Virus record (IMG/VR): IMGVR_UViG_3300036715_004471
Location: 1-64,000 of that record
Strand: one strand, 5' to 3'
Length of the DNA: 64,000 bases
This document shows, piece after piece, positions 8,543 through 61,016 of this stretch (the stretch's first letter is position 1; every line of letters begins with the position of its first letter). The notes below the pieces were generated by a model that made no database searches, was not told where the DNA came from, and saw only the letters and a program-made list of their open reading frames with translations. A program made the position numbers and the translations under genes.

Positions 8543-10075
8543 TTATCCCTTTACCGTACACAACGGCATTAGTTTGGCAACAACTCTAGCAATACCAGCT
8601 TCCTCAACTGAGTTGATAACCGGAGTAATAGGCTTGTATGCGTAAGGAGCTTCTTCTTTGACTCTCTCCTTATACTTAGCCATGATGTCTTTTCTCATTT
8701 GCATCTGAGGAGATTTTGGATCCACAGATGTTACAATTCTCAATTCACTGGTTTGTTCATCGAAAATCTTATCAGAAACATGAGAGGCTTCTCCTCTTGG
8801 CATGATTCTGCCAGCTCCATGACAAGCACTCTCCAAAGCATCTGGATTACCCAAACCAGTCAATAGATAACTAGCGCTACCCATAGATCCAGGAATGATA
8901 ACAGGTTTACCAATCCACTTGTCTTCTCTATCTGGACCTTCTGCGGGAGTGGCTCCTTTGCGATGAATGAAGCTATCGCCCTTCTCAAAAACCAAATTGT
9001 GAGGAGCATCGTACACCAAACGAGCATCAACCTCAGATTTGATGACTTCTTGAATGGCTTTAATAGCCATCAACCCAAGAAACAATCTATTAACAAAAGC
9101 AAAATTTGCCGCATTTCTCATGCTGTTAAGATAAAAAATTCCTTCTTTTGCGTGCTCACCAATTGTTGGCAATACGAAAAAGTCATTCTTGGGAATTTTA
9201 ATTCCTTTAGGAAAGATTTCACGGGCACGATCAACGAAGTGCCATCCAACAGCATGACCCAAACTAACAGAGCCAGAATGAATCATGATTGCCAGATTAC
9301 CAGTATTGATATTCAACTCCATAGCAGTTTGCTTACAAAGAATCTCCTCAATCTTCTGGAACTCCACAAAATGATTACCACCCCCGACAGAACCAATCTG
9401 CGGGTCACGACCATCTTTGTTGCCAGAAGACTGGATCAATTTTTCAAAACCAAACAAACGGGTAGTATCGAAACCACCACCGTTGTGTGCTTTATCAAGA
9501 TCGTCTAGCTGAGCATTGGGATTAAAGAACTTATAAATACCAACCCCGGCATTATCTTCGCAAGTTTCCAATAGTCCTGGAAGACCATAACGAAGAACAG
9601 CCTCTCGTTGGCGAGGAGACATGGGAATATCTCTTTGACCTTGGAAGAAGATTTCTCTGAGGCGTTTCTGAATAGCGCCCCAATGCTCATCCAATTTAGA
9701 AACAGGAATATCCGTTACTAACAAACGCATACCACAACAGATATCATTACCAATAGCAGAAGGAATAACGAACCCTCTGTTTTCTACCACGGTTCCAATA
9801 GGAATGCCAGAACCTTTATGGAAGTCAGGGGTCAAAGCAACCTTTCTAATTCCGACATTTTGGTCGCCGAAAAAAGAAAAATTTCCGGACTTCTCTCCAG
9901 AGAGAATGTCGGAAATTGCGCGTTGAACATCTAGAAAATCGAAAAGCTCTTGAAATGCATCTCTATCAATTGCCACCTCTTCATTGGCGAAGAGTTTGAC
10001 GTCTAGATGCAAATTGTTATTGATTTGGCAGCAAGAACTAGAAATTCTATTAACTGACCATTCTGCGTTATACAT
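8543..10075 (-). CDS. rtcB: RtcB family RNA ligase
   Basis: PDFHKG, DICCGM, GGGNHFVE, HSGS, HN, HRKGAT, PGSMG, HGAGR, EEAPYAYK, VKG end. Confidence 0.95.
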   Translation of the reverse strand: MYNAEWSVNRISSSCCQINNNLHLDVKLFANEEVAIDRDAFQELFDFLDVQRAISDILSGEKSGNFSFFGDQNVGIRKVALTPDFHKGSGIPIGTVVENRGFVIPSAIGNDICCGMRLLVTDIPVSKLDEHWGAIQKRLREIFFQGQRDIPMSPRQREAVLRYGLPGLLETCEDNAGVGIYKFFNPNAQLDDLDKAHNGGGFDTTRLFGFEKLIQSSGNKDGRDPQIGSVGGGNHFVEFQKIEEILCKQTAMELNINTGNLAIMIHSGSVSLGHAVGWHFVDRAREIFPKGIKIPKNDFFVLPTIGEHAKEGIFYLNSMRNAANFAFVNRLFLGLMAIKAIQEVIKSEVDARLVYDAPHNLVFEKGDSFIHRKGATPAEGPDREDKWIGKPVIIPGSMGSASYLLTGLGNPDALESACHGAGRIMPRGEASHVSDKIFDEQTSELRIVTSVDPKSPQMQMRKDIMAKYKERVKEEAPYAYKPITPVINSVEEAGIARVVAKLMPLCTVKG

Positions 10076-15217: not shown

Positions 15218-15231
15218 AAATCCTTTATAGG

Positions 15232-15303
15232 TGGTTCCAAAGGGAATCGAACCCTTATAGCCGGGGTTAGAATCCGGCGCCCTAGCCGTTGGACGATGGA
15301 ACC
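15232..15303 (-). tRNA. tRNA with CUA anticodon (amber suppressor type)
   Basis: GGTTCCA/TGGAACC acceptor, GTCC/GGGC D stem, CCGGA-TTCTAAC-CCCGG anticodon arm, AAGGG-TTCGATT-CCCTT T arm. Confidence 0.85.
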
Positions 15304-35192: not shown

Positions 35193-36101
35193 TCAATTTC
35201 CAGTTTTGTGTGGCTTGACCACTCCAGACGCCAGACCGATCTGAAACCGTTCCCAATAGTTACTAGGATACAATTTCAAACAGTCCAAAGCATTTTCGTA
35301 AGCGAATGCTCTCCACCATCCAGAAGAAATGCTGGTGCATACTTTGGAAAGTGAAAGCCGCCATGCTTTCTCAGGCGTCATCTTCCCGGGATGGGGAACC
35401 AGACTTCGTTCAATCGCAAGTACCGCAGACTCTTCCACTACGGAATAGAGCTGAATCTCGCGGGGACAAGCGAAGAACTTGTTCTTATCACAGAGGACTT
35501 CGGCACCATCTTTTTGAAAGTAAGTATAAGCCGGACGATCCGCCAACGCAACAGTGGCATGAATCGAATCATGATCGTAAACGTATCCCACACCATCCTC
35601 ACTGAAGAAGTCTGCTTTGCCGACATTCAGTTTAGGATGATTATAGGTATAAGTTTCCTTCTCACGCATCTTATGAAACTCCTCGAACTCCGGACGAACC
35701 TTGGCTCCTACCATCTTCATCAGATGATAATCAGAAAGGTTCTTCCAGAAATGAGGAGAGTTCCTCAGATACTTGTGAGAGGACTTGATAGTGAACAGCA
35801 TGTCCAGGCTAGGAACCAACCCGAACGGCGTGCTCATGGTATCAGGATCTTCCACAACCAGTTGGAGCAGAAGTTCGGAACTTCTGCTGGGATTAATCAA
35901 CTCAAACTCACAGTTGACTGCCCCGCGCACCACTCGTTTGGTGGGCGTAATCTTAATGTTGATGGGACCAACCCGACCGGACTGTTCAAGGATCCAGCTG
36001 CTGTATTCTGCTTCGGTGCAAACCCAATCGAAGTCCTTGGGCTCACGATGAAGAAGAAATGGTGCCCGAAACTTCAAAGCTCTGCTTCCGATCAGGATCA
36101 C
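35193..36101 (-). CDS. phage protein with polymerase-beta-like nucleotidyltransferase N-terminus
   Basis: LIGSRAL..PKDFDW (GS..DxD); IKSSH, YDHDSIH, SGWWRAF; GTG start after GGAG. Confidence 0.65.
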   Translation of the reverse strand: MILIGSRALKFRAPFLLHREPKDFDWVCTEAEYSSWILEQSGRVGPINIKITPTKRVVRGAVNCEFELINPSRSSELLLQLVVEDPDTMSTPFGLVPSLDMLFTIKSSHKYLRNSPHFWKNLSDYHLMKMVGAKVRPEFEEFHKMREKETYTYNHPKLNVGKADFFSEDGVGYVYDHDSIHATVALADRPAYTYFQKDGAEVLCDKNKFFACPREIQLYSVVEESAVLAIERSLVPHPGKMTPEKAWRLSLSKVCTSISSGWWRAFAYENALDCLKLYPSNYWERFQIGLASGVVKPHKTGN

Positions 36102-36705
36102 GACAACTTTTCTCCATTTGGAATGCGTGGATTTTCTCAACCCATACTAAAAAATCATGTACTGATCTAGTCAGTTTTGCTTTGTTACAATCTTCGCAAG
36201 ATGGGACAACGTTATCCCTATCATGGTTTAATAGACTATTTATTCTATCTAATCCATTATAGATGAAATCTCCATCTTGAATCCTTTGTTTTGAGAACCT
36301 GCTGTTAGCATATTTATACGCATTGTACGTATTTTTAGGCTCATCTCCACAATAGAAACATTTTTCTTGCGATAACACTACAAATTCTTCAAATGATAAG
36401 TTGCCATCTGAATATCTGTCAGTGAAAATCTTTTTGGCTGAACCTAATCTTGGCTGCAAGCCGGGACGGGCTCGCTGCGCCTTCTTTAGGTTAATTTTAA
36501 CTGACTCTACATTAAGACACCCACAACTCTTGGTTTTGCCCGTCTTAACATAGGATAGCCTTATATTTAAGACCGTTCCACAATCGCAAACACATTCAGA
36601 CAAAACATGACCATCATTTGTACGAGAGGTCAGAATTTTCTGTATTGTAAGACGATTGAATTGTTTTCCTATTAGTTCTCGTGCCGATTTTATATGCCTA
36701 TTCAT
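36043..36705 (-). CDS. HNH-type homing endonuclease (related to 1529..2083)
   Basis: FNRLT..CDCG..SCGCL; CFYCG; NGLDRINS..NVVPSCEDCNKAK. Confidence 0.85.
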   Translation of the reverse strand: MNRHIKSARELIGKQFNRLTIQKILTSRTNDGHVLSECVCDCGTVLNIRLSYVKTGKTKSCGCLNVESVKINLKKAQRARPGLQPRLGSAKKIFTDRYSDGNLSFEEFVVLSQEKCFYCGDEPKNTYNAYKYANSRFSKQRIQDGDFIYNGLDRINSLLNHDRDNVVPSCEDCNKAKLTRSVHDFLVWVEKIHAFQMEKSCRDPDRKQSFEVSGTISSSS

Positions 36706-37221: not shown

Positions 37222-37500
37222 TCAGTGGTCCTTGTTGAAGTGAAACTGGCTTGCCATGAAATCGCAGGTGGAAGTTGAGATGATGATCTCATAGATCGGA
37301 TACTTCTGCTGGTATCCATATCTCGATCGATAAGTTGCTCGATCAGAGCTACCCAACGAATCGTCAGAAACGGTTCGCTTCTTAATGGAAAGAACCACCC
37401 CACTATTCACATTCCATTTAGGATATTGGGCGCCACATTCCGGAGACTTGTTTAGAAGGTCACCAGGAACGATACTTTCGTCATCTTGAAGTTTACTCAC
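37222..37500 (-). CDS. hypothetical protein
   Basis: 92 aa ORF. Confidence 0.5.
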   Translation of the reverse strand: MSKLQDDESIVPGDLLNKSPECGAQYPKWNVNSGVVLSIKKRTVSDDSLGSSDRATYRSRYGYQQKYPIYEIIISTSTCDFMASQFHFNKDH

Positions 37501-37699
37501 GGAACACTCCTCTGATAGTTTTTCCGATCTTGGTAATCGGAATACTCACCAGAATCAAGGTGCCCGCAGCAAGAATAGACAAGCCCTCAACCAAAGCTTT
37601 GGTACGCTTTGGTCCATAAATCAGTCGATTGGCTGTGACGATGGGAGCCACCATCACCAGAAAAACGCCAACCTTGGGATCTTCGTTTTTTATTTTCAT
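37493..37699 (-). CDS. small membrane protein
   Basis: AGGAG RBS, hydrophobic segments. Confidence 0.6.
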   Translation of the reverse strand: MKIKNEDPKVGVFLVMVAPIVTANRLIYGPKRTKALVEGLSILAAGTLILVSIPITKIGKTIRGVFRE

Positions 37700-37716
37700 G
37701 AATCTCCTGTAAAAAT

Positions 37717-37858
37717 TGTGTGTAACGGTGCTCTTCCGTTATACGGTTTGCAATAACCCGTGCCCTAGCGACTCAGTAGGCTACACCAGTGACCGGAGGA
37801 CTGCAACCTTTTTATCCAGTTTGGTGCTACGTATTGCCATCATTTAGACCAACACACA
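37717..37858 (-). ncRNA. tRNA-like structured RNA (142 nt)
   Basis: TGTGTGT/ACACACA 7-bp closing stem stacked on AACGG-AAGAGCA-CCGTT (5 bp + 7-nt loop). Confidence 0.5.
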
Positions 37859-37860
37859 GC

Positions 37861-37993
37861 GGGAAGAGATGGATTTGAACTATCATCTCAAACAAAAGCA
37901 GCCATCTGTTCGCCACTCGGTGTCGAGTGATAGCTTATGAGGCTACGGTCATGCTTATTGTTTGCGCTCTAATCTCTGTTGAGCTATCTTACC
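37861..37993 (-). ncRNA. tRNA-like RNA with enlarged anticodon arm containing a CAT stem-loop
   Basis: GGTAAGA/TCTTCCC, GCTC/GAGC D stem, CAAACAA/TTGTTTG arm, GATAG-TTCAAAT-CCATC T arm. Confidence 0.7.
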
Positions 37994-38057
37994 AGATGGG
38001 TATAGGGGCGAATTTAATCCGCCCCGTTCCCCATGTTGCACTTACGCAGTGCGCGGA

Positions 38058-38510
38058 TCACTCAGCAGCGGGCTTGACAGGAACGTCTGCCCAACGACGC
38101 ACGCCACCGCGGAGACCCTTCTTGATGTAGAAGGCGCGGGTACGGGCAGGCTCTGCCACAGCGAGAACCACATCATTCTCATCCTTCTTCTCCGGCTGAT
38201 CCGAATTGATACGAACCCAGCTCTTGATGCGATCGCTGAGAATCTTGAAGTTCTCTGCATTGGGATTGAGATTAACGATCGCGAAAGTCACGATACTATC
38301 CATGCTCAAGGGCGCACCCGCGGCGACCTTGGTATCGAAAACGTTGTGAACGGCAGCACCGATCGCCTCGTCTTCCTTCTCGCAGAGAGACTCGAACTCG
38401 ATGAGACGAGTCGAGAACTTCTCAATGGTCGCATCGAAATCGACCTTACCATCAACCCCACGCACAGCGTAGTCGCTGAGCATGTTAAACGAAAGCACGC
38501 TATCACTCAT
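38058..38510 (-). CDS. hypothetical protein
   Basis: GGAG RBS; KKGLRGGVRRW. Confidence 0.7.
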   Translation of the reverse strand: MSDSVLSFNMLSDYAVRGVDGKVDFDATIEKFSTRLIEFESLCEKEDEAIGAAVHNVFDTKVAAGAPLSMDSIVTFAIVNLNPNAENFKILSDRIKSWVRINSDQPEKKDENDVVLAVAEPARTRAFYIKKGLRGGVRRWADVPVKPAAE

Positions 38511-39230: not shown

Positions 39231-39409
39231 TTCTTATCAAGGTAGTTCTGAAAGAACTTAGTCTCGTTGAAATAATCAGCCGCCTTGATAAAGGGTTTGG
39301 CAACAAAGGTTGCCGCCTTAATCAGGGAGGAGTGAACAACCAAGAGTACCAGCTTGTACGTCGGTTGGAACTTGCGAGCTTCCAGCTCAATGACTCGATC
39401 GATAGACAT
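39227..39409 (-). CDS. hypothetical protein
   Basis: 60 aa, AAGGAG RBS. Confidence 0.5.
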   Translation of the reverse strand: MSIDRVIELEARKFQPTYKLVLLVVHSSLIKAATFVAKPFIKAADYFNETKFFQNYLDKK

Positions 39410-39963
39410 GTATCTTCTCCTTCGGAAAGTAGGGGGTGTGCTTCGTACTCGGAACCCAGAGAAACGACAGAGAAGTCTACCAGATTTTGGGTTCTTCTGT
39501 TTCTAAATCTGTAAACATCCAACCACCCATTTCGTTGCAGAACCTTGTTCTGCGCACTATTAGTGGTTACATGCGTACAGAAAAGAACAGTGTAGCCTCT
39601 ATCTCTGGCGATAGCTCTTCTAAACTTGCCAAGGATAGTGCCAACACCTTTGTTGCGGTAATGGGAGAAAACTTTCTCTCCAGTCGACATGCAAACGCCA
39701 CAGCATCCGCGCAACTGACAAAGAACAAACTCCGCGATTTCCGCCTTGGTATCGGCGTCACGAATAACGAAACCAGCCCCCTCTTCAGACTCGATGAATC
39801 TGGTGTTTCGATTATTCAGCGGCTCCAGATTGTCGAAGCGCTTTGAAGGAGTGATCAAGATCTCCACACGATTGATCTTCAGAGTGCGTCGAATCTCTTC
39901 ACAACACTCTTTCGCGTATGCGGGAACCTGAGTGAGTCTAGCCCAAATACTGTCGTTACTCAT
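39322..39963 (-). CDS. GNAT-fold acetyltransferase
   Basis: VFSHYRNKGVGT (motif A), N..Q..VLQRNGW; paralog of 59172..59960. Confidence 0.75.
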   Translation of the reverse strand: MSNDSIWARLTQVPAYAKECCEEIRRTLKINRVEILITPSKRFDNLEPLNNRNTRFIESEEGAGFVIRDADTKAEIAEFVLCQLRGCCGVCMSTGEKVFSHYRNKGVGTILGKFRRAIARDRGYTVLFCTHVTTNSAQNKVLQRNGWLDVYRFRNRRTQNLVDFSVVSLGSEYEAHPLLSEGEDTCLSIESLSWKLASSNRRTSWYSWLFTPP

Positions 39964-40609
39964 GTTTTTCCTTAGCAGCATCTTGCGCCGTATGTACTGC
40001 ACGGATCAGATCCACTTGACTCCTCAAAACAAACATGATGTTACGATACACATCGTATTGTCGAGGGTGCTTCTTACGAGCCGACTTCAACATCGGCAAA
40101 ATTCGGTTGGTGGTTTCTTCCAGATATCCATCCTGCTTATCTCTGGAAAAGACAGGGACGATGGTACTCTGGTTGTGGATTCTATCTGACCCCTTGACTA
40201 CCGAAGAAATGGGATCATCTTCCATATCAAGGAAGTAGACTTCTGGATCAATCTTACGACCACGATGGGTCTTGGTGACCAACTCAGTGGCGCGCGAGAT
40301 TCGAGTGCTGAATCTTGAATCCAATTCCTTGAAACCAACATCGTAATCTTCCGGGCAATCATGCAAGAAAGATACGGCAATGGTTTCTTCCGGAAACATC
40401 AGACCACTAGAGAGTGTCAGAAGATATCCAGCAATCTCAATCTGATGGTAAAACTCCGGGGTGATCTTGTCTTTTCTGGTCCCCTTATGAAAACCAAGAG
40501 CGAACTCCATGGCTTCCAATGCAGTGAACCAACCTTTGCCCAAGAGAGTGTGTCTAACGGCGATGGTGTGTCTCTGGTATCTGTCCAGAATAACTTCTGC
40601 TGATTCCAT
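39956..40609 (-). CDS. HD-domain (p)ppGpp hydrolase-like protein (SpoT-HD/Mesh1 type)
   Basis: H.GTRKD..PEFYH, LHDCPED, VTK, VKGSDRIHN. Confidence 0.85.
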   Translation of the reverse strand: MESAEVILDRYQRHTIAVRHTLLGKGWFTALEAMEFALGFHKGTRKDKITPEFYHQIEIAGYLLTLSSGLMFPEETIAVSFLHDCPEDYDVGFKELDSRFSTRISRATELVTKTHRGRKIDPEVYFLDMEDDPISSVVKGSDRIHNQSTIVPVFSRDKQDGYLEETTNRILPMLKSARKKHPRQYDVYRNIMFVLRSQVDLIRAVHTAQDAAKEKHE

Positions 40610-40642: not shown

Positions 40643-41644
40643 TTACTTCTTCATCTGACTGAGATACCAACCGCGAGCTTTATCGCCGACTGGTTTCTGA
40701 ACCTGCTTCCAATCCAATCCAGAAGCCTCAAGCTCATCTTGGTTTTCCTTCTGAACATCCGTAGCAATCCAGCCAAGGAACTTGCCAATGAGCTTCTGAT
40801 TGAAAGTCAGAGAACCATCATCAGAAACCGCCCGAGCCCCCTGCTCCAAACGCGCCATAGTCAGCACCATACCAGCAAACAGATTGGCATTCTCAGCCGA
40901 TTCTGCATTGACCTGAGCAGCAACCTTTGCCTTGACAACACGATGGGCTTCACCCTTCGCCTTAAAAACAAGGTTGCAATAGTTGGCATAACCAAGATGT
41001 TCGACAGAAGTTGGATAGAAAACCAATCCTTCTCCAGTGCCCTTGATACCGAAAGTAGAATCTACCCACGGATCATTCTGCTCTACCGCCATAACCCATT
41101 CGTTGATCAACGAAGTTTTCGCAGATAGAGTCTCATCACTAGCCGACCAGTCTACTTGGATTGGATCGTTATGCCATGGCAGAATATGAATGCCAAGCTC
41201 CGAAGCAACTGGCGACAAAAGATCAGCCAAATGAGTAGGCTCAGAAATAAGAACGCCGTCTTCCGTATTCAGAGAGCGAGCAGCAAACAAAGCAAAAACC
41301 TTATCATTAAGCTGCTCAAGTGCAACTCCGCTTTGAATACCCTTGCCGCACCACTCGCCATACAGGATAAAACCATTGGCATTAGAAGCTAGAAGGGGAG
41401 CCTTGATTGTCTCGACCCACTTAGCAAAACCTTTATTATCTTTTTCAGGAGTAAGAACAACGCCTCTACTCTGACAAACGATACTTCCATCGTTATGAAT
41501 TTGAATTGCATGATTCTCTCCATGCAACTTAACCTTACCACGATAGGTAACGATCGGATAGCCGTTCAAAATATCAGGAACAGAAACAGCATACTTTCTG
41601 ATATTATGGAAGCCTTCGATTTCGGTCCAGGGAATGACAGCCAT
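40643..41644 (-). CDS. ATP-dependent RNA ligase (Rnl2-like)
   Basis: KLHGEN, QSR, YGEWCG, GEGLV, FKAK. Confidence 0.85.
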   Translation of the reverse strand: MAVIPWTEIEGFHNIRKYAVSVPDILNGYPIVTYRGKVKLHGENHAIQIHNDGSIVCQSRGVVLTPEKDNKGFAKWVETIKAPLLASNANGFILYGEWCGKGIQSGVALEQLNDKVFALFAARSLNTEDGVLISEPTHLADLLSPVASELGIHILPWHNDPIQVDWSASDETLSAKTSLINEWVMAVEQNDPWVDSTFGIKGTGEGLVFYPTSVEHLGYANYCNLVFKAKGEAHRVVKAKVAAQVNAESAENANLFAGMVLTMARLEQGARAVSDDGSLTFNQKLIGKFLGWIATDVQKENQDELEASGLDWKQVQKPVGDKARGWYLSQMKK

Positions 41645-54604: not shown

Positions 54605-54649
54605 ATGTTTGAGTTGGTTTGCGCCGCAGTACACCATCACGCTCAAGTG

Positions 54650-54739
54650 AGCGCCTGCGGGAGTCGAACCCGTCCCTCCAACTCGAAGAACTTTGAAGTG
54701 AGAGCCACAGTGTGCTATTACGCCAAAAACTACAGACTC
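54650..54739 (-). ncRNA. degenerate tRNA-like RNA
   Basis: GAGTCTG/CAGGCGC; CGGG-TTCGACT-CCCG; no normal anticodon loop. Confidence 0.5.
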
Positions 54740-54874
54740 CCAACTAGGTAATTCCTATAGGGTCGCACCCTTCACCACGATGGACGAAGGAACCTATAAG
54801 AACCTAAACCGATCTGCCCGCTATTGCAATGTCTCGGAACGATGGGTCCGGACAAAGCGCACCACACCTTTTCT

Positions 54875-59960: not shown

Positions 59961-60116
59961 CTCCCCAACCAGAAGTGGTGCTTTGAAGGCAGAAGTCTAA
60001 CCACCAACCATCCCAGTTATTAGGACCGCTGGCATGAAGCATAAACTTCTTCCTCAGTTTCAGAATCTGCATCCGAATTTCTGCTTCGGTTAGCATGACT
60101 CAATTACCTTTCTTAG

Positions 60117-60295
60117 TGCGCCTAATGGGAGGCGAACCCACAACCTCCATCGTGTTAGGATGGCACTCTTCCTGATGCTTATGCTTATCGGACAGTGTAA
60201 GAGTTACCCCCACACGAAAGGAAGCTTGCGCATCCAAGTGCAGGAGGATTACTTAGCAGTGCCGGGCAAGGCATGAATTTTTGAGCTTCAGGCGC
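60117..60295 (-). ncRNA. tRNA-like RNA (179 nt)
   Basis: GCGCCTG/TAGGCGC + A; GTGGG-TTCGCCT-CCCAT; several internal hairpins. Confidence 0.6.
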
Positions 60296-60525
60296 GAAAC
60301 GTGGTGCGCCTAATCAGCACACCAAAACTCAGGCTTAGGACTTACCGGGTTACGATTTGGTGTCCAGCCAACCACACACATACGGATGCGAATCACTCCA
60401 TTTGCACCTGTCTATTATCCTTTGCAGGATTCACCAAGCAGCGTAGGTATGAGATTGCAACCGATATCTATGCAGTATTTATAATCCAGATGTTCGTGGG
60501 CTTGCGCCGGGGTCTTACCTCATCA

Positions 60526-60593
60526 TGCACGCGGGGATCGAACCCGCCATCTCCACAATTTATTGTGGTGAGTTCTCTTTGAACTCTTCTGCA
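60526..60593 (-). ncRNA. embedded tRNA-like cloverleaf
   Basis: GAGTTC/GAACTC, CCACAA/TTGTGG, GCGGG-TTCGATC-CCCGC. Confidence 0.55.
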
Positions 60594-60699
60594 ACAATGA
60601 AACTCAACCTCCATAAAACTGGCTCACGTAGATAGAATGCTTTTAAGGCATTACCTATGAACCAACAAGCATATTGTTAATCTCGCAAAAATCTTAGCA

Positions 60700-60780
60700 T
60701 CGCTTGTGTGGACTCGAACCACATAGCCTAAGCACCTCACTTAAAATGCGAGGCGACTCTCCCAGGAGTCAAACAAACGA
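60700..60780 (-). tRNA. embedded atypical tRNA-like element (UUU loop)
   Basis: TCGTTTG/CAAGCGA, GACTC/GAGTC, CCTCGC-ATTTTAA-GTGAGG, TGTGG-TTCGAGT-CCACA. Confidence 0.6.
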
Positions 60781-61016
60781 AACCTCAGCGAGCACTCATC
60801 TTGCCAGCCATCGAGAACCTCACGGTCTCAACATGAGATAGTACATCTTTCTCAGTTGCCTTGCGGCACCAGTCGCACAGATGATAGTACCTCAACCCAA
60901 CTTCATGGCATCTGGGTAACCCAAGTGGCTACCTTTGTTTTGGTGCGCTGACTAGGCGCACAACATCTTTTACTTCAAAAACAGTTCGCGATCTTGTTGG
61001 AGACCGCAATCACTGT

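What the first reader, a model, noticed from the sequence alone, without database searches (positions are those of the whole stretch)
37717..37993. tRNA body with a second anticodon stem-loop (CAU) nested in its anticodon arm, abutting a second elbow RNA
Seen: 37861-37993 has near-normal acceptor, D and T arms. Its anticodon helix CAAACAA/TTGTTTG encloses about 60 nt containing GTAGC-CTCATAA-GCTAT (a typical Met/Ile2 anticodon hairpin, 37930-37946) and a CACTCG/CGAGTG hairpin. Two nucleotides away, 37717-37858 has a perfect 7-bp stem plus a 5-bp/7-nt arm with a non-TTC loop. Inference: a displaced anticodon loop could bait CAU-specific nucleases (VapC-type) or modifying enzymes, or be rearranged by cleavage and RtcB ligation.
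Basis: partly seen in the sequence, partly recalled or inferred. Interest (0 to 1): 0.7.

Follow-up and report, generated by a model that had tools for sequence, protein, structure and literature searches.

The report
Non-decoding tRNA-like RNA in huge phage
Between two genes of a 446-kb phage lies a conserved tRNA-shaped RNA that cannot decode, because its anticodon arm is replaced by a lineage-specific extension (here a long helix tipped by a conserved copy of a Met/Ile-type anticodon hairpin); it is a real, unusual tRNA mimic of unknown job, not an ordinary tRNA gene.

Summary
Element 1 (37993-37860) has a tRNA acceptor stem, D arm and T arm. Six lineages keep them (96.9% of cells paired, compensatory changes), although third-codon positions of the neighbouring gene are only 49-71% identical. 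No lineage has a usable anticodon loop. The anticodon arm is 15 nt, about 35 nt, or a 12-19 bp helix carrying a two-hairpin module. The module includes the CAU hairpin. It is 40/41 identical between the window and a relative with 67% protein identity (L036), and its enclosing helix covaries. Four other lineages with element 1 lack the module, and one relative (G002) lacks element 1 entirely. Element 2 (37858-37717) is a separate structured RNA that assorts independently.

Most likely this is a tRNA-derived, non-decoding RNA. It would be cut from the operon transcript by tRNA-processing enzymes and display a lineage-specific tip. A spliced tRNA, a Ro60-bound Y RNA and a dead pseudogene each fail tests made here. 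The bait idea is untested, and no RNA data were available. It is a new variant of the tRNA-mimic kind, of moderate interest.

The parts
37996..38034 (-). GC-rich hairpin just after the stop codon (38058-38060) of the 150-aa gene: ATGGG...GGGGCG-loop-CGCCCC...CCCAT. It ends 2 nt before element 1.
   Evidence: Read. A hairpin in this position, with a different sequence, is present in every lineage and is the only thing left in G002. The simple terminator scan did not call it. Its role as a protective 3' end is inferred.
37860..37993 (-). Element 1: tRNA-like RNA, 134 nt including the discriminator G37860. No CCA is encoded.
   Evidence: ARAGORN at a relaxed threshold; covariance model R1 scores it 86.7 bits, the next best own-genome hits being ordinary tRNAs at 34 bits or less; six-lineage pair counts.
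37987..37993 (-). Element 1 acceptor stem, 5' strand GGTAAGA. It pairs with 37861-37867 (TCTTCCC).
   Evidence: Position 37991 reads G on this strand in runs X2 and X5. The acceptor helix pairs in 97.6% of cells.
37966..37984 (-). Element 1 D arm, GCTC-AACAGAGATTA-GAGC. The loop lacks the usual GG.
   Evidence: Pair 11-24 switches between C-G and U-A, three lineages each.
37952..37964 (-). 5' strand of the long helix that replaces the anticodon stem: CAAACAA-T-AAGCA. It pairs with 37889-37900 (TGCTT-TTGTTTG).
   Evidence: In L036 the equivalent helix is 19 bp of mostly different sequence, which is covariation.
37930..37946 (-). Module hairpin 1: GTAGC-CTCATAA-GCTAT, a canonical 5-bp/7-nt anticodon-arm mimic with C32 U33 C34 A35 U36 A37 A38.
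   Evidence: Identical in L036. Unique in the genome and not a copy of any of the phage's own tRNA anticodon arms.
37914..37929 (-). Module hairpin 2: CACTCG-ACAC-CGAGTG.
   Evidence: In L036 the stem is identical and the loop is entirely different (CGCTC).
37901..37913 (-). Module single-stranded tail GCGAACAGATGGC. With the preceding G it contains GGCGAA, and it repeats the AGATG of the T-stem 5' strand.
   Evidence: one Y transition against L036. The resemblance to the YrlA GNCGAAN0-1G motif (PMC4201824) is inexact.
37868..37884 (-). Element 1 T arm, GATAG-TTCAAAT-CCATC, with a canonical T-loop.
   Evidence: Pair 52-62 switches between G-C and A-U, and pair 50-64 among A-U, G-U and G-C. A weak antisense hit to a plastid tRNA-Ser 3' end first showed the strand.
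37717..37858 (-). Element 2: an independent multi-branched RNA of about 142 nt. It is closed by the 7-bp stem TGTGTGT/ACACACA (37858-37852 / 37723-37717), with the hairpin AACGG-AAGAGCA-CCGTT (37740-37724) directly abutting the 3' strand, which is acceptor/T-minihelix geometry.
   Evidence: It is conserved in the L001 lineage (82% identity) with three compensated pairs. It is absent in L036, L037 and L040, and replaced in L005 and run X5. There is no Rfam match.
37697..37708 (-). Ribosome-binding site AGGAG (37708-37704) and ATG (37699-37697) of the downstream 68-aa gene, 9 nt after element 2.
   Evidence: The same small gene follows the RNA gap in all relatives.

Best explanation
Element 1 is a tRNA-derived RNA that no longer decodes. 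It keeps the parts of a tRNA that tRNA-processing enzymes recognise (a 7-bp acceptor stem stacked on a 5-bp T arm, a T-loop and a D arm). Its anticodon arm has become a free expansion site carrying a different, locally conserved tip in each sub-lineage.

It lies inside an operon: upstream gene, stop codon, GC-rich hairpin, element 1, an optional second RNA, then the ribosome-binding site of a small gene.

Inferred steps:
1. It is co-transcribed with the flanking genes.
2. RNase P cuts at its 5' end, leaving the upstream mRNA ending in a protective hairpin.
3. RNase Z or exonucleases trim its 3' end, probably followed by CCA addition (the phage encodes a CCA-adding-type enzyme).
4. The result is a stable L-shaped small RNA that acts as a natural 'tRNA scaffold' for its tip.

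In the window's lineage the tip is a 12-bp helix ending in a three-way junction: a perfect Met/Ile2-type (CAU) anticodon hairpin, a second hairpin and a 13-nt single strand. The sequence of this module is under strong constraint, stems included, so it most likely binds a specific partner. The leading guess is a protein that reads the CAU anticodon arm. The partner is unknown.

Element 2 is a separate RNA with the same acceptor/T-type minihelix at its ends, probably released by the same enzymes.
For: Shown:
- The body is conserved at 85-86% in three lineages where third-codon positions of the adjacent gene are 49-71% identical.
- 96.9% of cells pair, against 48-57% in slid controls, with compensatory changes in the D and T stems.
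- No lineage has a 7-nt anticodon loop in the canonical position; the arm is 15 nt, about 35 nt, or a 12-19 bp helix plus module.
- The discriminator varies (G, A or T) and CCA is encoded in only two lineages, which argues against one conserved aminoacylation identity.
- Tips are conserved within pairs of lineages and differ between pairs: the module in window/L036 (40/41), CTGCGGG(G)TG in L005/L037, and GRTCG in L001/L040.
- The helix enclosing the module covaries, 7+5 bp against 19 bp.
- The hairpin-2 loop differs completely while its stem is identical. That points to long divergence under selection rather than recent transfer.
- The gap has the same strand as its neighbours and no promoter-like site on that strand.
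- A hairpin just upstream is present in all lineages.
- The base at -1 is U in 4 of 6 lineages.
- Element 1 is unique in the genome.
- The phage encodes a CCA-adding-type nucleotidyltransferase, RtcB and an RNA ligase.
- Other tRNA bodies with non-decoding anticodon arms occur in related phages G007, G012 and G005.

From established knowledge (my own, not tested here): RNase P, RNase Z and the CCA-adding enzyme need only the acceptor/T minihelix and elbow.
Against: - There is no expression or processing evidence: no RNA library holding the stretch was listed.
- Excision by RNase P/Z, CCA addition and stability are all inferred.
- G002 has the same gene pair with only the hairpin between the genes, so the RNA is dispensable.
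- The window's copy has mismatches in the acceptor stem (strain-specific) and the T stem.
- The D-loop lacks G18-G19, so the elbow may be non-canonical.
- Only six lineages are known. The module is known from two lineages plus near-identical strains.
- No binding partner is identified.
Confidence: 0.5

Rival explanations
1. Element 1 is only a cis-acting processing and stability signal, a form of 'tRNA punctuation'. It exists so that RNase P/Z cut the polycistronic transcript between the two genes. The anticodon-arm region is irrelevant and drifts, and the module is a passenger.
For: Only the features that processing enzymes recognise are conserved in all six lineages, while the anticodon arm varies widely. 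The element is placed between a 3' hairpin and the next ribosome-binding site. G002 manages without it. Weak mascRNA-like and other minimal tRNA-like elements occupy the same gaps in relatives.
Against: A neutral passenger would not be 40/41 identical where third-codon positions are 49% identical, nor keep identical stems around a completely changed loop. The other tip types are also conserved within their lineage pairs.
Confidence: 0.2
2. It is a Y-RNA-like partner of the phage's Ro60 (Rsr) protein, an unpermuted analogue of YrlA. The long helix and the GGCGAA motif would form the Ro-binding site and the tRNA-like body the effector module.
For: The phage encodes a Ro60 orthologue (vWA_Ro60 E = 1e-18, TROVE above its cut-off) and RtcB. 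No Rfam YrlA is found anywhere in the genome or beside the Ro gene. GGCGAA sits on the strand that leads into the T arm, the position of GNCGAAN0-1G in YrlA (PMC4201824). The Ro-less complete relative G001 has element 1 without the module.
Against: Two near-complete Ro60-bearing relatives (G002, G003) lack both the module and element 1. The motif is a 6-mer with the wrong spacing (2 nt, not 0-1). The locus is about 52 kb from the Ro gene at the nearest (across the record ends), whereas YrlA lies within 4 kb on the same strand (PMC4201824). The topology is not permuted. The Rfam YrlA model does not match.
Confidence: 0.08
3. It is a genuine tRNA(CAU) gene interrupted by intron-like segments. 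Removing the two helix strands would leave a class II tRNA with the CAU arm, a long variable arm and a T arm. Cutting and religation would be done by phage enzymes such as RtcB or the RNA ligase.
For: In the window, deleting 37964-37947 and 37900-37880 on paper gives a cloverleaf with a perfect T stem (GATGG/CCATC), a CAU arm and a long variable arm (inspection). RtcB and an RNA ligase are encoded. A 92-nt tRNA-Ile(UAU) with a long variable arm exists in relative G002.
Against: The same operation in L036 gives a T stem with an A53.C61 mismatch, while its unspliced T stem is perfect. Lineages without the insert have 5-nt or 15-16-nt loops and cannot decode either. The phage has no splicing endonuclease and no ribozyme or group I match. 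A two-segment excision of this kind has no precedent in bacteria. The genome holds no other tRNA with a large insert.
Confidence: 0.04
4. It is a decaying tRNA pseudogene or recombination scar with no function.
For: The window copy has mismatches in the acceptor and T stems. Indels in the anticodon arm are frequent. The element is lost in G002. The tail of the module repeats the T-stem 5' strand, which suggests a duplication or recombination origin.
Against: The body is kept, with compensatory changes, across lineages whose silent sites are near saturation. The acceptor mismatch is absent in sister strains. The module is 40/41 identical to L036.
Confidence: 0.08

Closest known systems
YrlA (bacterial and phage Y RNAs bound by Ro60/Rsr; Chen et al. 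2014, PMC4201824)
   Same: It is a tRNA-derived mimic with D arm, T arm and acceptor-like stem, in which a long helix replaces the anticodon arm. The M. smegmatis YrlA is cut by RNase P and receives CCA. This phage encodes Ro60 and RtcB. A GGCGAA motif lies in the analogous place.
   Different: YrlA is circularly permuted (its ends lie in the Ro-binding stem and its acceptor is closed), lies within 4 kb of rsr, and carries GNCGAAN0-1G. Here the topology is that of a normal tRNA, the locus is far from the Ro gene, the motif spacing differs, the Rfam model does not match, and Ro60-bearing relatives lack the element.
tRNA-like processing signals that release adjacent RNAs: mascRNA at the MALAT1 3' end, and the vtRNA-miRNA (TMER) units of murine gammaherpesvirus 68 (my own knowledge; Rfam RF01684 for mascRNA)
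   Same: These are non-decoding tRNA-shaped units embedded in a longer transcript. RNase P/RNase Z recognise them, which defines the ends of neighbouring RNAs. Their anticodon arm is reduced or altered, and a tRNA-like unit is directly followed by another structured RNA.
   Different: Those are eukaryotic or eukaryotic-virus systems. Here the anticodon arm is expanded rather than reduced and carries a conserved module. Only a weak mascRNA-model hit was seen, and in a different element of a relative.
T4 RNAC and RNAD, the stable small RNAs of the T4 tRNA cluster
   Same: These are phage-encoded small RNAs of unknown role, transcribed from the tRNA region (PMC3014915).
   Different: Element 1 is not in the tRNA cluster (which lies at about 357-427 kb) but inside a protein-coding operon.
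The engineered 'tRNA scaffold' (anticodon arm replaced by a cargo RNA for stable expression; Ponchon and Dardel 2007, my own knowledge)
   Same: The architecture is the same: an intact acceptor/D/T body, with the anticodon arm replaced by a helix carrying an arbitrary structured RNA.
   Different: That is a laboratory design. A natural counterpart with interchangeable cargo has, to my knowledge, not been described.
Canonical tRNA-Met / tRNA-Ile2 (CAU)
   Same: Hairpin 1 has the exact form of their anticodon arm (5 bp, loop CUCAUAA). The body has tRNA arms, and its acceptor and T arm are near-identical to phage tRNA-Phe and tRNA-Tyr genes (L015, L010, L016, L022).
   Different: The hairpin sits about 12 bp beyond the normal anticodon position at a three-way junction, so it could not reach an mRNA codon on the ribosome (inference). 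The RNA is not detected by Rfam's tRNA model or by default ARAGORN.

Membership tests
Canonical decoding tRNA (Rfam RF00005) | 7-bp acceptor stem, D arm, and T arm with a T-loop | tested here: met
   16 pairs, 96.9% of cells paired in six lineages; T-loop TTCAANN in five of six. The D-loop lacks GG.
Canonical decoding tRNA (Rfam RF00005) | 5-bp anticodon stem with a 7-nt loop (U33, purine 37) directly after position 26 | tested here: not met
   the loops are 5 nt (L001, L040) or 15-16 nt (L005, L037), or the arm is a 12-19 bp helix plus module (window, L036).
Canonical decoding tRNA (Rfam RF00005) | Detected by the family model or a standard tRNA finder | tested here: not met
   No RF00005 hit even at E <= 10. 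ARAGORN finds it only with introns allowed and a 95% threshold.
Intron-containing tRNA (group I, or protein-spliced bulge-helix-bulge type) | A self-splicing intron fold, or a splicing endonuclease plus a consistent mature cloverleaf | tested here: not met
   No intron or ribozyme family hit. No tRNA_int_endo gene. The paper-spliced product is inconsistent between the window and L036. RtcB is present.
YrlA / Y RNA | Match to Rfam RF02553 | tested here: not met
   no hit at the locus. The only weak hits (E 0.03-0.36) lie in the tRNA arrays.
YrlA / Y RNA | GNCGAAN0-1G motif in the Ro-binding strand | tested here: inconclusive
   GGCGAA-CA-G in the window and GGCGAA-TA-G in L036. The spacing is 2 nt, not 0-1. 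A GNCGAA 6-mer is expected by chance about 0.06 times in 60 nt.
YrlA / Y RNA | Encoded within about 4 kb of rsr on the same strand, and co-occurring with Ro60 | tested here: not met
   The Ro60 gene is at 431735-433297 and the element at about 38 kb. The Ro60-bearing G002 and G003 lack it. The Ro60-less G001 has element 1.
YrlA / Y RNA | Bound by Ro60 | not testable with these tools
   This needs immunoprecipitation.
tmRNA | tRNA-like domain with G3:U70, a tag reading frame, and detection by ARAGORN | tested here: not met
   ARAGORN -m finds none. G3:U70 occurs only in L036. There is no conserved tag frame.
tRNA-like processing element (mascRNA/TMER type) | Cleaved by RNase P at the 5' end and RNase Z at the 3' end, and CCA-added | not testable with these tools
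   The geometry (7 + 5 bp minihelix, T-loop) is present. No RNA data were available.

The most novel reading that the evidence does not exclude
A huge phage uses a natural 'tRNA scaffold'. An L-shaped, RNase P/Z-processed body displays interchangeable cargo in place of the anticodon arm. In this lineage the cargo is a free-standing CAU anticodon-arm decoy. It would titrate or misdirect a host factor that reads tRNA-Met/fMet/Ile2 anticodon arms, such as an anticodon nuclease used in defence or a modification enzyme such as TilS or TmcA. Other lineages would carry other cargos aimed at other targets.
Probability: 0.15. Interest if true: 0.8.

Novelty: new variant of a known kind. Interest (0 to 1): 0.55.

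Why it matters
tRNA mimics are few, and each has taught something about RNA processing or quality control: tmRNA, YrlA, viral tRNA-like structures, mascRNA. This one keeps a normal tRNA topology but turns the anticodon arm into a swappable display site. That is the design used in the laboratory as the 'tRNA scaffold', and to my knowledge it has not been reported in nature.

If the CAU tip is a decoy, it would add a new kind of counter-measure to the contest between phages and tRNA-targeting host defences. If it is only a processing signal, it still shows that huge phages punctuate operons with tRNA-shaped units. Either way, such genes are invisible to standard tRNA and Rfam annotation, so similar elements are probably being missed in other large phage genomes.

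Tried and rejected
- **Standard detectors.** Rfam at gathering and at E <= 10, and ARAGORN for tRNA and tmRNA, gave nothing at default settings.
- **Phage database.** BLAST of 36-40 kb against 'phages' found no match.
- **Neighbour protein in viral contigs.** No relative was found.
- **Pattern scans.** The exact 3' body and the exact module gave 0 hits. The degenerate 3' pattern found only the known lineages, ordinary tRNA-Tyr/Phe genes and coding coincidences. The element 2 pattern found only the known lineages. The degenerate 5' pattern found only coding coincidences in viral contigs, and the single metagenome scan gave one coding coincidence.
- **'This genome has many intron-bearing tRNAs'.** Relaxed ARAGORN lists many candidates, but most lie inside ORFs. 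A strict structural scan finds no other body with a large insert; shuffled genomes give 0-3 hits.
- **Paralogues.** Neither element has one in the genome.
- **Copy of the phage's own tRNA-Met arm.** It is not one.
- **RNA evidence.** No RNA run was listed in two searches, one of which first failed as busy.
- **Ro60 link.** Tested by co-occurrence and not supported. No conserved RNA lies upstream of the Ro gene. A weak genome-wide YrlA hit at 424194-424346 was not reproduced in a local scan. The record holding L071 could not be searched.
- **Phage-encoded TilS, MetRS, PIN/VapC and splicing endonuclease.** All absent.
- **Stop-codon recoding.** Examined only crudely. No TAG-specific signal appeared, and no alternative code is claimed.
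- **The 226-aa ORF at 39322-40002 with a weak GNAT hit.** Not pursued, because gene callers in relatives place an opposite-strand gene there.
Full report
**What the window is.** The window is the first 64 kb of a single-contig virus record of 446,541 bp with 38.7% G+C. ARAGORN finds 56 tRNA genes, all on the minus strand. Two have a CTA anticodon, and most of the 17 whose sequences I printed end in an encoded CCA. Around the finding all long ORFs are on the minus strand and pack tightly under the standard code. Their matches are typical of phages: an RNA ligase (40643-41644), an HD phosphohydrolase, an HNH endonuclease (36043-36705) and a DUF7275 protein. The finding occupies a 358-nt gap between a 150-aa ORF (38058-38510) and a 68-aa ORF (37493-37699).

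**Checking the observation.** As an RNA the object reads on the minus strand. A weak Rfam hit to the antisense of a plastid tRNA-Ser 3' end first showed this. The order acceptor, D, T, acceptor and the canonical T-loop TTCAAAT fit only that strand.

Element 1 runs from 37993 to 37860 and consists of:
- acceptor GGTAAGA/TCTTCCC;
- D arm GCTC/GAGC;
- a 7+5 bp helix (CAAACAA-T-AAGCA with TGCTT-TTGTTTG);
- the hairpin GTAGC-CTCATAA-GCTAT (37946-37930);
- the hairpin CACTCG-ACAC-CGAGTG (37929-37914);
- a 13-nt single strand;
- T arm GATAG-TTCAAAT-CCATC;
- discriminator G.

Element 2 (37858-37717) begins 2 nt later. It has a perfect 7-bp terminal stem, with a 5-bp/7-nt hairpin (loop AAGAGCA) abutting the 3' strand.

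Taken alone, none of this is beyond chance:
- Default ARAGORN and Rfam are silent.
- ARAGORN reports a 'tRNA with a 57-nt intron' only at a lowered threshold.
- The fold z-scores are -1.1 and -1.8.
- Anticodon-like hairpins occur about 1.3 times per kb on this strand.

**Relatives.** The upstream 150-aa protein has only six relatives' clusters among 5.8 billion proteins. Their contigs, plus whole-record searches, gave the same gene pair in these further lineages:

| Lineage | Protein identity to window | Element 1 | Anticodon-arm region | What follows element 1 |
|---|---|---|---|---|
| window (L007-L009 identical) | - | yes | 7+5 bp helix + module | element 2 |
| L005/L006 | 77% | yes | about 35 nt, loop with CTGCGGGGTG | a different element |
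| L037 | 77% | yes | about 32 nt, loop with CTGCGGGTG | nothing |
| L036 | 67% | yes | 19-bp helix + module | nothing |
| L001-L004/L025 (complete 452-kb genome, G001) | 56% | yes | TCGGT-GGTCG-ACCGA | element 2 |
| L040 | 57% | yes | TCGGT-GATCG-ATCGA | a different conserved element (note below) |
| G002 | 63% | no | - | only the hairpin, then the small gene |
| G005 | 43% | no | - | a different minimal tRNA-like element |

In the six lineages that have element 1, it follows a GC-rich hairpin placed just after the stop codon. The acceptor (GGGAAGA/TCTTCCC), D arm and T arm are conserved. Of 96 pair cells, 96.9% are standard pairs, against 48-57% when the partners are slid. Pair 11-24 switches between C-G and U-A, pair 52-62 between G-C and A-U, and pair 50-64 among A-U, G-U and G-C. 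The body is 85-86% identical to the window in L036, L005 and L037, while third-codon positions of the adjacent gene are 49%, 71% and 67% identical. The window's U3.C70 mismatch is strain-specific: contigs from two other metagenomes read G3. A covariance model of the body scores the window copy at 86.7 bits and the G001 copy at 68.9 bits. Ordinary tRNAs score 41 bits or less. Element 1 is therefore a real RNA gene under purifying selection, and single-copy in its genome.

**It cannot decode.** In no lineage is there a 5-bp stem with a 7-nt loop after position 26 (see the table). The discriminator is G, A or T, and CCA is encoded in only two lineages (L036, L040). That argues against a conserved aminoacylation identity. 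In G002 the gap contains only the hairpin, so the RNA is dispensable.

**The module.** Four lineages lack the CAU hairpin, but L036 has it. The block from CGTAGCC to AGATG is 40/41 identical between the window and L036, leaving out the loop of hairpin 2, although silent sites nearby are near saturation. The loop of hairpin 2 is entirely different (ACAC against CGCTC). The enclosing helix has largely different sequence but remains fully paired. This pattern fits long divergence with selection on the sequence of both hairpin stems, the CUCAUAA loop and the tail. It fits recent transfer poorly. The motifs are unique in the genome and copy none of the phage's own tRNA arms.

The tail repeats the AGATG of the T-stem 5' strand. 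Together with hairpins 1 and 2, the module looks like the anticodon arm, long variable arm and T-stem 5' strand of a class II tRNA. A 92-nt tRNA-Ile(UAU) with a long variable arm exists in relative G002. An origin by recombination with such a gene is plausible, but this is an inference.

**Element 2.** It is 82% identical in the L001 lineage. Compensatory changes occur in the terminal stem (U-A to C-G), in the T-like hairpin (G-C to A-U) and in a third short helix. An alternative 5' hairpin predicted for the window alone is broken by the same change, which favours the terminal-stem model (my inspection of the L001 sequence). Element 2 is absent in L036, L037 and L040. In L005 a different element takes its place. 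A contig from run X5 carries element 1 with the module followed by the L005-type element. The two RNAs are therefore independent units, and their abutment is not a conserved relationship.

**Most likely mechanism (inferred).** The gap has no promoter-like site on the gene strand, so element 1 is probably transcribed with its neighbours. What is conserved is exactly what RNase P, RNase Z and the CCA-adding enzyme recognise: a 7+5 bp acceptor/T stack, the T-loop and the D arm. The base at -1 is U in four of six lineages. Cutting at G37993 would leave the upstream mRNA ending in the conserved hairpin. Element 2 has the same minihelix geometry at its ends. The phage encodes a CCA-adding-type enzyme.

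I conclude that element 1 is a tRNA-derived scaffold released by tRNA-processing enzymes, and that its anticodon-arm site carries lineage-specific tips. Three tip types are each conserved within a pair of lineages. The CAU tip would sit about 12 bp beyond the normal anticodon position at a three-way junction, so it cannot serve in decoding. Its sequence constraint points to a specific binding partner, which remains unknown.

**Rivals tested.**
1. *Spliced tRNA.* There is no splicing endonuclease and no intron or ribozyme family match. The paper-spliced product has a good T stem in the window but a mismatched G53-C61 position in L036. The lineages without the insert cannot decode either.
2. *Y RNA.* The phage has a Ro60 orthologue and RtcB and no recognisable YrlA. 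GGCGAA lies where YrlA has its GNCGAAN0-1G motif (PMC4201824). However, the spacing is wrong, the topology is not permuted and the locus is far from the Ro gene. Two near-complete Ro60-bearing relatives lack the module and element 1, while the Ro-less G001 has element 1.
3. *Pseudogene.* The conservation and covariation contradict it.
4. *Pure processing signal.* This is compatible with the body but not with the conservation of the tips.
The phage has no PIN, TilS or MetRS gene, and the host is unknown.

**Limits.** No RNA library holding the stretch was listed, so expression, ends and processing are all inferred. Only six lineages carry element 1, two carry the module and two carry element 2. 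The pattern scans of IMG/VR and of JGI metagenomes found no further members.

**Verdict.** The finding is a real, conserved, tRNA-derived non-decoding RNA with an expandable anticodon-arm site. A separate structured RNA abuts it. It belongs to the broad kind 'tRNA mimic' but fails the membership tests for tRNA, intron-bearing tRNA, YrlA and tmRNA, so I rate it a new variant of a known kind. Interest is moderate (0.55): the object is unusual and invisible to standard annotation, but its function and even its expression are unproven.

Noticed in passing
window 15230-15303 (-); also genome 320811-320884 (-): Two tRNAs have a CTA anticodon (amber-suppressor type), which hints at TAG readthrough or recoding. 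A crude test of ORF coverage showed no TAG-specific gain. Removing TGA raised coverage most in the first 140 kb and the last 60 kb. No alternative code is claimed.
   Followed up: partly
window 8546-9850 (-); genome 431735-433297 (-); genome 260626-261018 (-); window 40643-41644 (-): The phage carries an RNA repair and quality-control gene set: RtcB (E = 2e-93), a Ro60/Rsr orthologue (vWA_Ro60 and TROVE domains), a CCA-adding-type nucleotidyltransferase, and an RNA ligase next to an HD phosphohydrolase. No Rfam YrlA is found anywhere in the genome, so the Y RNA that partners the phage Ro60 is unidentified.
   Followed up: partly
window 60130-60800 (-): This non-coding stretch of about 650 nt holds tRNA-Lys(TTT), which is 81-82 nt with an oversized middle, plus two further T-arm motifs: GGCGGGTTCGATCCCCGC near 60545 and TGTGGGTTCGCCTCCCAT near 60135. 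ARAGORN calls the latter a poor 'tRNA-Met with a 40-nt intron' at 60116-60247.
   Followed up: no
window 54649-54794 (-): This intergenic tRNA-like candidate passes ARAGORN's default threshold with introns allowed ('tRNA-His, 52-nt intron'). It has a good T arm but weak acceptor and D stems, and a weak tRNA-Sec model hit at E = 0.45.
   Followed up: partly
L001 3838-3900; L036 about 1195-1250; L037 about 1030-1090; L040 about 925-984: A further conserved non-coding element (core GACACCTATCGYTGTTAGCGCTGAYAGAGTGGTGTGAC) lies downstream in the same locus in four relatives. It is absent from the window.
   Followed up: no
L001 3960-4100; L101 (reverse strand) about 1945-2010: The same intergenic gap in relatives holds minimal tRNA-like units made of an acceptor, a T arm and one hairpin. 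One in L001 (4018-4071) gives a weak mascRNA-model hit (E = 0.48). G005 has GGGACCA...GTCGG-TTCGAAT-CCGGC-TGGTCCC.
   Followed up: no
L107 1501-1580 (G007); L108 1501-1580 (G012); L110 1501-1592 (G002); L105 1501-1575 (G014, reverse strand): Related Ro60-bearing phages carry other odd tRNA-type genes. Two bodies with a GGGAAGG/CCTTCCC acceptor have a 15-nt extension capped by a GNRA tetraloop in place of the anticodon loop. There is also a 92-nt tRNA-Ile(UAU) with a long variable arm, and a tRNA with an 8-nt anticodon loop.
   Followed up: no
genome 421420-421494 (-) and 426450-426524 (-): The phage's own tRNA-Phe(GAA) has a D-loop without GG (AAATAGATTA) and a non-canonical T-loop (GCGATAC). 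Its tRNA-Tyr(GTA) has a short variable loop rather than the long arm usual in bacteria.
   Followed up: no
window 1-64000: G+C rises from about 34% at the start of the window to about 56% at its end. IMG/VR classes the 446.5-kb record as 'provirus', although a related genome of the same size has direct terminal repeats.
   Followed up: no
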